This document shows, one piece after another, positions 11,472 to 11,730 of a stretch of DNA of 22,082 nucleotides (its first letter is position 1; every line of letters starts with the position of its first letter). The notes under the pieces were generated by a model. That model was not told the DNA's origin. It made no database searches and saw only the letters and a list, made by a program, of their open reading frames with translations. The stretch spans positions 1 through 22,082 of the forward strand of contig NW_021823628.1 of the NCBI RefSeq assembly GCF_006345805.1, written 5' to 3'. Both the position numbers and the translations under genes were made by a program. This DNA is from Octopus sinensis. Lineage: Eukaryota.

Positions 11472-11730
11472 ATACTAAGCAATAAAGGGTTTAGCAACGA
11501 ATTGCCTTACCACATACCGAATTTAGAAATAGCAGTCAAAGAGTTATAGCTATTTCTTCTACTAAAAAGGGAGATCTCAGTAAAAACAGCAATTGGAAGG
11601 CAATTCCAATTGCTGTTTTTACTGAGTTCTCCCTTTTTCGTAGAAGAAATAGCTATAACTCTTTGACTGCTATTTCTAAATTCGGTATGTGGTAAGGCAA
11701 TTCGTTGCTAAAACCTTTATTGCTTAGTAT
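11472..11730. repeat. 259-bp near-perfect palindrome
   Basis: arms 11472-11598 and 11604-11730 (127 bp each, 3 mismatches), loop GGCAA. Confidence 0.97.

What the first reader, a model, noticed from the sequence alone, without database searches (positions are those of the whole stretch)
11472..11730. 259-bp near-perfect palindrome with a template-switch signature at its tip
Arms of 127 bp with only 3 mismatches and a 5-nt loop. Such structures extrude cruciforms and are usually unstable, so this one is recent or maintained. The 10-mer AAGGCAATTC occurs both across the tip (11597-11606) and at 11694-11703, so the minus strand reads a 97-bp unit, restarts the same unit for 10 nt, then folds back. 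That is what reverse transcription of a tandem or circular template followed by snap-back would give. If transcribed it yields 127 bp of dsRNA, a substrate for ADAR editing (extensive in coleoids) or Dicer.
Basis: partly seen in the sequence, partly recalled or inferred. Interest (0 to 1): 0.7.

Follow-up and report, generated by a model that had tools for sequence, protein, structure and literature searches.

The report
Hairpin-shaped transposon-like repeat in octopus DNA
A real 259-bp near-perfect DNA palindrome sits in repeat-rich octopus-type DNA; it is most likely an ordinary small hairpin-shaped DNA transposon (or a one-off inverted duplication) with a DNA-repair scar at its centre, not a product of reverse transcription.

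Summary
The arms are 11472-11598 and 11604-11730: 127 nt, 3 mismatches, loop GGCAA. AAGGCAATTC occurs across the tip and 97 nt away. The hairpin is far beyond chance (z = -33). The tip match is modestly beyond chance (P about 0.003-0.008).

The window is microsatellite- and SINE-rich octopod DNA; a SINE peptide hits an Octopus bimaculoides protein.

The reverse-transcription reading fails the tests I could run. A 97-nt tandem or circular template predicts that the outer 27 nt repeat the end of the unit, and they do not. I found no tandem array, no RT-like reading frame, no hammerhead ribozyme and no long target duplication, although neighbouring SINEs keep 8-11-bp duplications.

The element 11475-11727 is flanked by TA/TA at the edge of a (TA)n tract. 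It is small, non-coding and entirely terminal inverted repeat. That is the anatomy of a palindromic TA-target MITE.

Without the 5-nt loop the centre is a perfect spacer-less palindrome. The loop therefore reads either as a templated insertion from break repair or as the remnant of an inner direct repeat.

Copy number, the decisive test, could not be obtained: no searchable collection holds octopus DNA. Interest is low to moderate.

The parts
11472..11598 (.). Left arm of the palindrome (127 nt)
11599..11603 (+). Asymmetric 5-nt centre GGCAA. Without it the centre is the perfect spacer-less palindrome CAATTGGAA|TTCCAATTG.
   Evidence: direct reading
11604..11730 (.). Right arm of the palindrome (127 nt), 124/127 complementary to the left arm
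11475..11727 (.). Putative mobile element proper (253 bp, CTAAGCAAT...ATTGCTTAG) if the flanking TA dinucleotides are a target-site duplication
   Evidence: direct reading; inference
11473..11474 (.). Left TA of the putative TA target-site duplication, the last TA of the (TA)n tract
11728..11729 (.). Right TA of the putative TA target-site duplication
11597..11606 (+). Tip copy of AAGGCAATTC, made of 2 nt of the left arm, the loop and 3 nt of the right arm
11694..11703 (+). Subterminal copy of AAGGCAATTC in the right arm. It is the candidate template or outer direct repeat. With gaps the match extends to TGG[T]AAGGCAATTC..TTGCT.
11499..11508 (+). Mirror copy GAATTGCCTT in the left arm
11405..11471 (.). 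Compound (TG/CA/TA)n microsatellite that abuts the left end and provides the target TA

Best explanation
The palindrome is a small, non-coding, palindromic DNA transposon of the MITE or foldback type. The element proper is about 253 bp (11475-11727) and consists entirely of two long terminal inverted repeats. A transposase supplied in trans by a TA-target family (Tc1/mariner/pogo superfamily) moved it by cut-and-paste into a TA at the edge of a (TA)n tract, duplicating that TA. It is now a passive insertion whose arms have drifted 2.4% apart.

The 5-nt asymmetric centre is a DNA-level junction, not a product of reverse transcription. There are two readings of it. (a) It is a templated insertion made during end-joining of a break at the centre of a once perfect palindrome. 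In that case the 3' end ...TGGAA primed on TTACCA 90 nt away, copied GGCAATTC, and re-annealed through TTC. (b) It is the last nucleotides of an inner direct repeat of one slightly longer inverted repeat, kept when the interior of a parent element was lost by abortive gap repair at the TTCCA/TGGAA microhomology.

Shown here: the anatomy, the TA flanks, the absence of coding capacity and the tip match. Inferred: mobility, the superfamily, and which repair route made the centre. If the locus is transcribed, the RNA folds into about 127 bp of duplex and would be a substrate for ADAR.
For: The arms are 127 nt with a 5-nt spacer, and all of the element is inverted repeat.

Pairing stops within 3 bp of TA on both sides. 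The reconstructed empty site is ...ATATATA-TA-TTACTT, an AT-repeat target of the kind Tc1-like transposases prefer (from established knowledge; sequence).

No ORF with a start codon lies in the element.

There is no retro-type duplication, although SINE copies in the same window keep 8-11-bp duplications at 4-5% divergence.

The flanks on the two sides are different unique sequences, as for an insertion.

The tip 10-mer is non-random (P = 0.003). [quoted passage not shown] Centre-break revision of palindromes is a described route (cited in PMC3300023).

A gapped outer/inner alignment of about 40 nt is compatible with an IR/DR layout (P about 0.006).
Against: Multi-copy status, the defining property of a MITE, could not be tested, and the window holds only this copy.

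The TA/TA flanks are weak evidence in DNA this AT-rich. The left TA is given by the microsatellite, and the right TA has a chance of roughly 0.1.

The termini (CTAAG...) match no Tc1/mariner terminal motif that I can recall.

A template 90-97 nt from the break is further than most templated insertions.

The extended outer/inner similarity is not significant once the 10-mer is removed (P about 0.1).
Confidence: 0.5

Rival explanations
1. A one-off, non-mobile inverted duplication made in place. A break or stalled fork next to the structure-prone (TA)n tract was repaired by fold-back (snap-back) DNA synthesis at the short inverted repeat GGAA..TTCC. The end was then rejoined to the microsatellite through ATA/TAT microhomology.
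For: There is a single copy in the window. The outer ends merge into the (TA)n tract with 3 bp of self-complementary microhomology. The self-complementary CAATTG and GGAA/TTCC at the centre could prime snap-back. The tip carries a template-switch-like signature. Snap-back and trans priming are documented in break repair.
Against: It needs two coordinated switches that leave both flanks collinear. It does not explain why pairing ends exactly at TA on both sides. De novo germline palindromes of this size are much rarer than MITE insertions (established knowledge, not tested here).
Confidence: 0.28
2. A reverse transcriptase, for example from a Penelope-like element, copied a tandem or circular 97-nt template, restarted the unit for 10 nt, then snapped back and copied its own cDNA. 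The hairpin cDNA was then integrated.
For: The 10-mer recurs at a spacing of 97 nt exactly at the fold-back point (P = 0.003). AGCAA also precedes both copies.
Against: The outer 27 nt do not repeat the end of the unit, as a tandem or circular template requires. There is no tandem array. No RT- or GIY-YIG-like frame was found. No hammerhead ribozyme was found at E <= 0.01. There is no poly(A) and no 8-15-bp target duplication, although SINEs nearby keep theirs.
Confidence: 0.05
3. An assembly or library artefact: a fold-back chimera from long-read adapters or from amplification.
For: Palindromes are a known class of artefact. No reads are available to check.
Against: The palindrome is short and internal, with more than 10 kb of collinear and different sequence on each side. 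The arms differ by three substitutions and no indels. The centre carries no adapter-like sequence.
Confidence: 0.05
4. A selected hairpin-RNA gene (an hpRNA, long miRNA-like precursor or ADAR substrate) kept palindromic by selection on the RNA structure.
For: The RNA hairpin is very stable. Long-hairpin miRNA models give sub-threshold hits (MIR7504, 55.9 bits against a gathering score of 83).
Against: All Rfam hits are below gathering score and are to plant or unrelated families, so they reflect structure only. All three arm differences are transversion-type and break pairs, with no wobble-compatible change (n = 3, so weak). A survey that included O. bimaculoides found little sign of Dicer processing of long dsRNA in molluscs (PMC12479628).
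Confidence: 0.07

Closest known systems
MADE1 (the Hsmar1-derived palindromic MITE of primates, source of miR-548) and palindromic TA-target MITEs of nematodes and insects; named from memory, not fetched
   Same: Short, non-coding, almost entirely two inverted repeats around a spacer of a few nt. Flanked by TA. The transcript folds into a long hairpin.
   Different: About three times longer (253 against about 80 bp). No sequence similarity was shown. Copy number and the parent transposon are unknown here.
IR/DR-type Tc1-like elements (Sleeping Beauty, Tc3, Minos and others); from memory
   Same: Long inverted repeats that carry an outer and an inner copy of a short direct repeat. TA target, with a preference for AT-repeat sites.
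   Different: Here only a 10-14-nt repeat is secure, the spacing is 97 nt rather than about 165 nt, and no transposase gene is present.
Templated insertions of synthesis-dependent MMEJ / polymerase-theta end joining (PMC5728401) and centre-break revision of palindromes (Cunningham et al. 2003, cited in PMC3300023)
   Same: A few inserted bases lie at a junction. Together with the flanking microhomology they duplicate a nearby sequence. The insertion sits at the exact symmetry centre of a palindrome.
   Different: The template lies 90-97 nt away, further than most reported cases. The enzyme cannot be inferred from sequence.
Palindromic AT-rich repeats (PATRRs) and closely spaced inverted Alu pairs; from memory
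   Same: An AT-rich (66%) inverted repeat with a very short spacer, in the class that extrudes cruciforms and stalls forks.
   Different: PATRRs are single-locus and several hundred bp long. Inverted Alus are two separate insertions. This element looks like one unit.
Penelope-like elements
   Same: PLE insertions often carry partial tandem and inverted 5' copies.
   Different: No RT/GIY-YIG frame, no hammerhead ribozyme and no tandem copy at this locus.

Membership tests
MITE, TA-target (Tc1/mariner-derived, Stowaway-like) | Terminal inverted repeats | tested here: met
   127-nt arms, 124/127 complementary
MITE, TA-target (Tc1/mariner-derived, Stowaway-like) | TA target-site duplication directly outside the inverted repeats | tested here: met
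   TA at 11473-11474 and 11728-11729. This is weak evidence, because the left TA belongs to a (TA)n tract and the region is AT-rich.
MITE, TA-target (Tc1/mariner-derived, Stowaway-like) | Small size and no coding capacity | tested here: met
   253-259 bp. No ORF of at least 20 aa with a start codon lies inside. There is a 66-codon stop-free stretch, but it has no start codon.
MITE, TA-target (Tc1/mariner-derived, Stowaway-like) | Many dispersed copies in the genome | not testable with these tools
   There is one copy in the window. Arm words give 0 hits in the metagenome, viral and GTDB collections. A SINE with 4 copies in the window also gives 0 hits there, so those collections hold no DNA of this organism.
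MITE, TA-target (Tc1/mariner-derived, Stowaway-like) | Inverted repeats shared with an autonomous transposase-encoding element | not testable with these tools
   No octopus genomic DNA is reachable.
IR/DR subgroup of Tc1-like elements | Two direct repeats (outer and inner) within each inverted repeat | tested here: inconclusive
   The 10-mer with gapped extension has P about 0.006. The remainder without the 10-mer has P about 0.1.
Penelope-like element / retro-derived hairpin | RT and GIY-YIG coding sequence in or next to the element | tested here: not met
   All stop-free frames of at least 55 codons derive from microsatellites or SINEs. Ten further frames gave no NCBIfam hit. That library is prokaryote-centred, so the test is weak.
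Penelope-like element / retro-derived hairpin | Hammerhead ribozyme in the pseudo-LTR | tested here: not met
   No hammerhead family appears in the Rfam scans at gathering score or at E <= 0.01.
Penelope-like element / retro-derived hairpin | Tandem or partial-tandem arrangement of the unit | tested here: not met
   TRF finds no array here. The outer 27 nt do not repeat the end of the unit.
Drosophila-type Foldback (FB) elements | Inverted repeats built of short tandem sub-repeats | tested here: not met
   No k-mer enrichment beyond shuffles in the arm and no tandem repeat.
Known RNA families (miRNA or hairpin precursors) | Match at or above the Rfam gathering score | tested here: not met
   The best hit is MIR7504 at 55.9 bits against a gathering score of 83.
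SD-MMEJ / templated-insertion repair scar | Inserted bases plus flanking microhomology duplicate a nearby template | tested here: met
   AA-GGCAA-TTC equals 11694-11703, with P = 0.003. The enzyme and the timing are not testable.

The most novel reading that the evidence does not exclude
The hairpin is not a passive transposon. It could be the product or working part of an undescribed process in octopods. One possibility is a snap-back cDNA element made by a retroelement RT. Another is a conserved long-hairpin RNA locus that serves as a dedicated ADAR or dsRNA-pathway substrate, with the centre motif repeated from the arm as part of its biogenesis.
Probability: 0.05. Interest if true: 0.6.

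Novelty: new member of a known kind. Interest (0 to 1): 0.2.

Why it matters
If it is a MITE it is routine repeat annotation, with two small points of interest. First, it would show how a palindromic MITE centre records the repair event that created or stabilised it. Second, it adds a single-insertion source of long dsRNA in a lineage famous for A-to-I editing, beside the usual inverted SINE pairs; one such pair lies at 15342-15585 / 15895-16157 in this window. If instead it is unique and arose in place, it is a clean germline example of palindrome formation next to a (TA)n tract.

Tried and rejected
1. I looked for other copies of the arm. The sensitive self-BLAST of the window found none. 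Exact 22- and 25-mers of the arm gave 0 hits in metagenome contigs, viral contigs and genome contigs. A control with a 26-mer of the SINE that has four copies in the window also gave 0 hits, so these negatives say nothing about copy number.

2. I tried to reach octopus DNA through proteins. Ten window ORFs are not in the protein collection. A SINE peptide found only one UniRef protein, from O. bimaculoides, and that protein has no contig on record.

3. Arm and SINE k-mers appear in no held paper.

4. I looked for an empty-site paralogue in the window. The flanks are unique.

5. I tested for 97-nt periodicity or a second unit in the arm and found none beyond the 10-14-mer.

6. I tested for sub-repeats in the arm, as in Foldback elements or subterminal binding sites. 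They are not enriched.

7. I checked for a known RNA family. Only sub-threshold structural hits appeared.

8. I ran no further search on the 66-codon frame across the tip. The collection evidently lacks octopus genomic ORFs, so it could not have answered the question.

9. A read of the octopus genome paper by PMC id failed because the paper is not held.

Full report
**What is there.** The inverted repeat is exactly as described. The arms are 11472-11598 and 11604-11730, 127 nt each, with a 5-nt spacer GGCAA. There are three mismatches, at 11489/11713, 11563/11639 and 11575/11627. All three are transversion-type and none is an indel. Pairing cannot be extended outward. As single-stranded DNA the 259 nt fold into one hairpin of -142.6 kcal/mol, against -22.1 +/- 3.7 for dinucleotide shuffles (z = -32.8). 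As RNA the value is -207.4 kcal/mol (z = -37). A scan of the whole window for non-microsatellite hairpins (arms of at least 18 nt, loop of at most 60 nt) returns only this one. The 10-mer AAGGCAATTC lies at 11597-11606 across the tip and at 11694-11703. Its reverse complement lies at 11499-11508, and it occurs nowhere else in the window.

**Is the tip match more than chance?** In 5000 shuffles of the arm with random loops, a word of at least 10 nt that contains the whole loop and recurs in the palindrome arose 15 times (P = 0.003). With one gap the match is 13/14 (GAATTGCCTT[A]CCA, P about 0.007). With permissive gaps about 40 nt of the outer end align with the 35 nt that end at the tip (P about 0.006). 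That score rests on the 10-mer, because the outer 27 nt alone give P about 0.1 and align elsewhere. The tip match is therefore probably not an accident, but these P values are post hoc and modest.

**Setting.** The window is AT-rich, packed with microsatellites and minisatellites, and has no convincing gene. At least three SINE-like families are present. One is a tRNA-derived SINE of about 386 bp with four copies that are 94.8-96.3% identical pairwise, three of them with intact 8-11-bp target duplications. A peptide translated from that SINE hits a single database protein, an uncharacterised protein of Octopus bimaculoides, at 88% identity. The palindrome lies between a compound (TG/CA/TA)n tract (11405-11471) and unique AT-rich sequence that is followed by (AT)36 at 11829-11900. 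To its left (about 11262-11400, minus strand) is a diverged tRNA-related SINE. The flanks on the two sides are unrelated to each other and to anything else in the window.

The model is reverse transcription of a tandem or circular 97-nt template, a 10-nt restart, then snap-back. It makes a prediction that the sequence itself can test. The 27 nt synthesised before the first 10-mer should be the last 27 nt of the unit. They are not. Other evidence also goes against it:
- There is no tandem array at or near the locus.
- There is no second copy of the arm in the window.
- No stop-free frame resembles a reverse transcriptase or GIY-YIG nuclease. All frames of at least 55 codons derive from microsatellites or SINEs, and ten further frames have no family match. 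That library is prokaryote-centred, so this part of the test is weak.
- No hammerhead ribozyme, a hallmark of Penelope-like elements, is found at gathering score or at E <= 0.01.
- There is no poly(A) and no 8-15-bp target duplication, although the neighbouring SINEs, which are more diverged than the two arms are from each other, still show theirs.

I therefore rate this model at about 0.05.

**What the anatomy fits.** Pairing stops three base pairs outside C11475 and G11727, and the two bases directly outside those positions are TA on both sides. Read this way, the element is 253 bp (CTAAGCAAT...ATTGCTTAG), consists entirely of terminal inverted repeat, has no ORF, and is flanked by a TA duplication. 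The reconstructed empty site is ...ATATATA-TA-TTACTT. This is the anatomy of a palindromic MITE moved by a TA-target (Tc1/mariner/pogo) transposase. Such transposases are known to favour AT-repeat targets (established knowledge). The evidence is thinner than it sounds. The left TA is supplied by the microsatellite, the right TA has a chance of roughly 0.1 in this composition, and the termini match no terminal motif I can recall. Above all, multi-copy status could not be tested.

**The centre.** If GGCAA is removed, the centre becomes ...CAATTGGAA|TTCCAATTG..., a perfect spacer-less palindrome. The five bases are thus an insertion at the exact symmetry centre. Together with two bases on one side and three on the other, they copy a sequence 97 nt away on the same strand. 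Two DNA-level routes give exactly this.

[quoted passage not shown] The 3' end ...TGGAA anneals to TTACCA, either on its own strand or on the other end. It copies GGCAATTC, unwinds, and re-anneals through TTC to the other end. In that model the inserted bases end up as part of a longer direct or inverted repeat (PMC5728401). The weakness is the 90-97-nt distance to the template.
- Route (b): the 10-mer belongs to an inner direct repeat of an IR/DR-type inverted repeat. In that case one repeat is about 137 nt and the other is clipped at 127 nt, joined at the TTCCA/TGGAA microhomology when the interior of a parent element was lost by abortive gap repair.

The two routes predict different things for other family members: a private centre for (a) and a shared centre for (b).

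**Rivals.** A non-mobile, in-situ fold-back duplication next to the fragile (TA)n tract remains a serious rival (about 0.28). It explains the single copy and the microhomology at the outer end. It needs two coordinated switches, however, and does not explain why pairing ends at TA on both sides. An assembly artefact is unlikely (about 0.05), because the palindrome is short and internal, is bounded by more than 10 kb of collinear sequence on both sides, and its arms differ by substitutions only. A selected hairpin-RNA gene is also unlikely (about 0.07). All Rfam hits are sub-threshold structural matches to unrelated long-hairpin families. The three arm differences all break pairs rather than being wobble-compatible, although n = 3. 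A mollusc-wide survey that included O. bimaculoides found little evidence for Dicer processing of long dsRNA and suggested editing instead (PMC12479628).

**Age and stability.** Closely spaced inverted repeats of this size are in the class that extrudes cruciforms, stalls forks and is depleted from the human genome. The arms differ by 2.4%, about half the pairwise divergence of the youngest SINE family nearby (3.7-5.2%). The structure is therefore young but not brand new, and neutral decay explains it without any maintenance. Gene conversion between the arms cannot be excluded.

**Consequences if transcribed.** About 127 bp of near-perfect duplex would form. That is a plausible ADAR substrate in a coleoid. 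It could also trigger the recently described RNA-level excision of DNA transposons, which is set off by pairing of inverted terminal repeats; that system has been shown in C. elegans and human cells, not in molluscs (PMC12779559). Nothing available here shows that the locus is transcribed.

**What could not be done.** No searchable collection holds octopus genomic DNA. The arm words give no hits, but neither does a SINE present four times in the window. The protein routes also end blind. The copy-number test that would separate the two leading explanations therefore has to be run against the source assembly.

**Verdict.** The most likely identity is a palindromic TA-target MITE-like element with a repair or deletion junction at its centre (0.5). 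This is a new member of a known kind, and interest is about 0.2.

Noticed in passing
window 6410-6795 (+), 7206-7593 (+), 13613-13997 (-), 18284-18674 (+): Four copies of a tRNA-derived SINE of about 386 bp, 94.8-96.3% identical pairwise, with no poly(A) tail (they end ...GTGCTTCCAT). Three copies have intact 8-11-bp target duplications, for example TTGATAATTTT, TTCGTATG and TAATGAGCG. A translated frame is 88% identical to the O. bimaculoides 'uncharacterized protein' A0A0L8H1P9, which is therefore probably a SINE-derived gene model.
   Followed up: partly
window 15342-15585 and 15895-16157: Two copies of a second SINE-like family lie in inverted orientation, about 82% identical and about 310 bp apart. 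This is a conventional inverted-SINE source of dsRNA, only 4 kb from the palindrome. The family has at least 8 further diverged copies, for example at 2577-2973, 6209-6371, 7977-8145, 9553-10040 and 18995-19292.
   Followed up: no
window 14480-14841 (also 675-815, 2373-2588, 14090-14224, 19366-19593): A third SINE-like family (B-box-like GAGTTCAAATTCC, core GGGGTCGAT..TTAAGTACCAGTT) occurs here as a head-to-tail dimer of 180-bp units at 88% identity. Next to it, at 14184-14289, is a perfect 32-bp x 3.3 tandem of its core. The diverged SINE directly left of the palindrome (about 11262-11400, minus strand) shares the core motif.
   Followed up: no
window 8489-9066: A pyrimidine-rich minisatellite with a unit of 101 bp and a higher-order unit of 209 bp, about 5 copies at 85-94% identity.
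   Followed up: no
window 16583-17107, 20037-20546, 20960-21419, 4242-4590, 10525-10634: Very long, strongly strand-skewed simple repeats: (TGG)175, (TG)n of about 510 bp, (GAT)154, a 35-bp purine unit x 10, and a 16-bp unit GAGGGGAGGAGGAGCG x 7. Together with the SINEs they leave almost no unique sequence in the window.
   Followed up: no
window 1339-1396 (+): The only Rfam hit above gathering score is tRNA at 32 bits against a threshold of 29. It covers model positions 8-63 and ARAGORN does not call it, so it is probably a SINE head rather than a tRNA gene.
   Followed up: no
window 11495-11692 (+) and 11510-11707 (-): A 66-codon stop-free stretch runs through the palindrome tip on both strands, mirror images of each other. 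It has no ATG/GTG/TTG start and no sign of coding, and is probably a by-product of the symmetry.
   Followed up: partly
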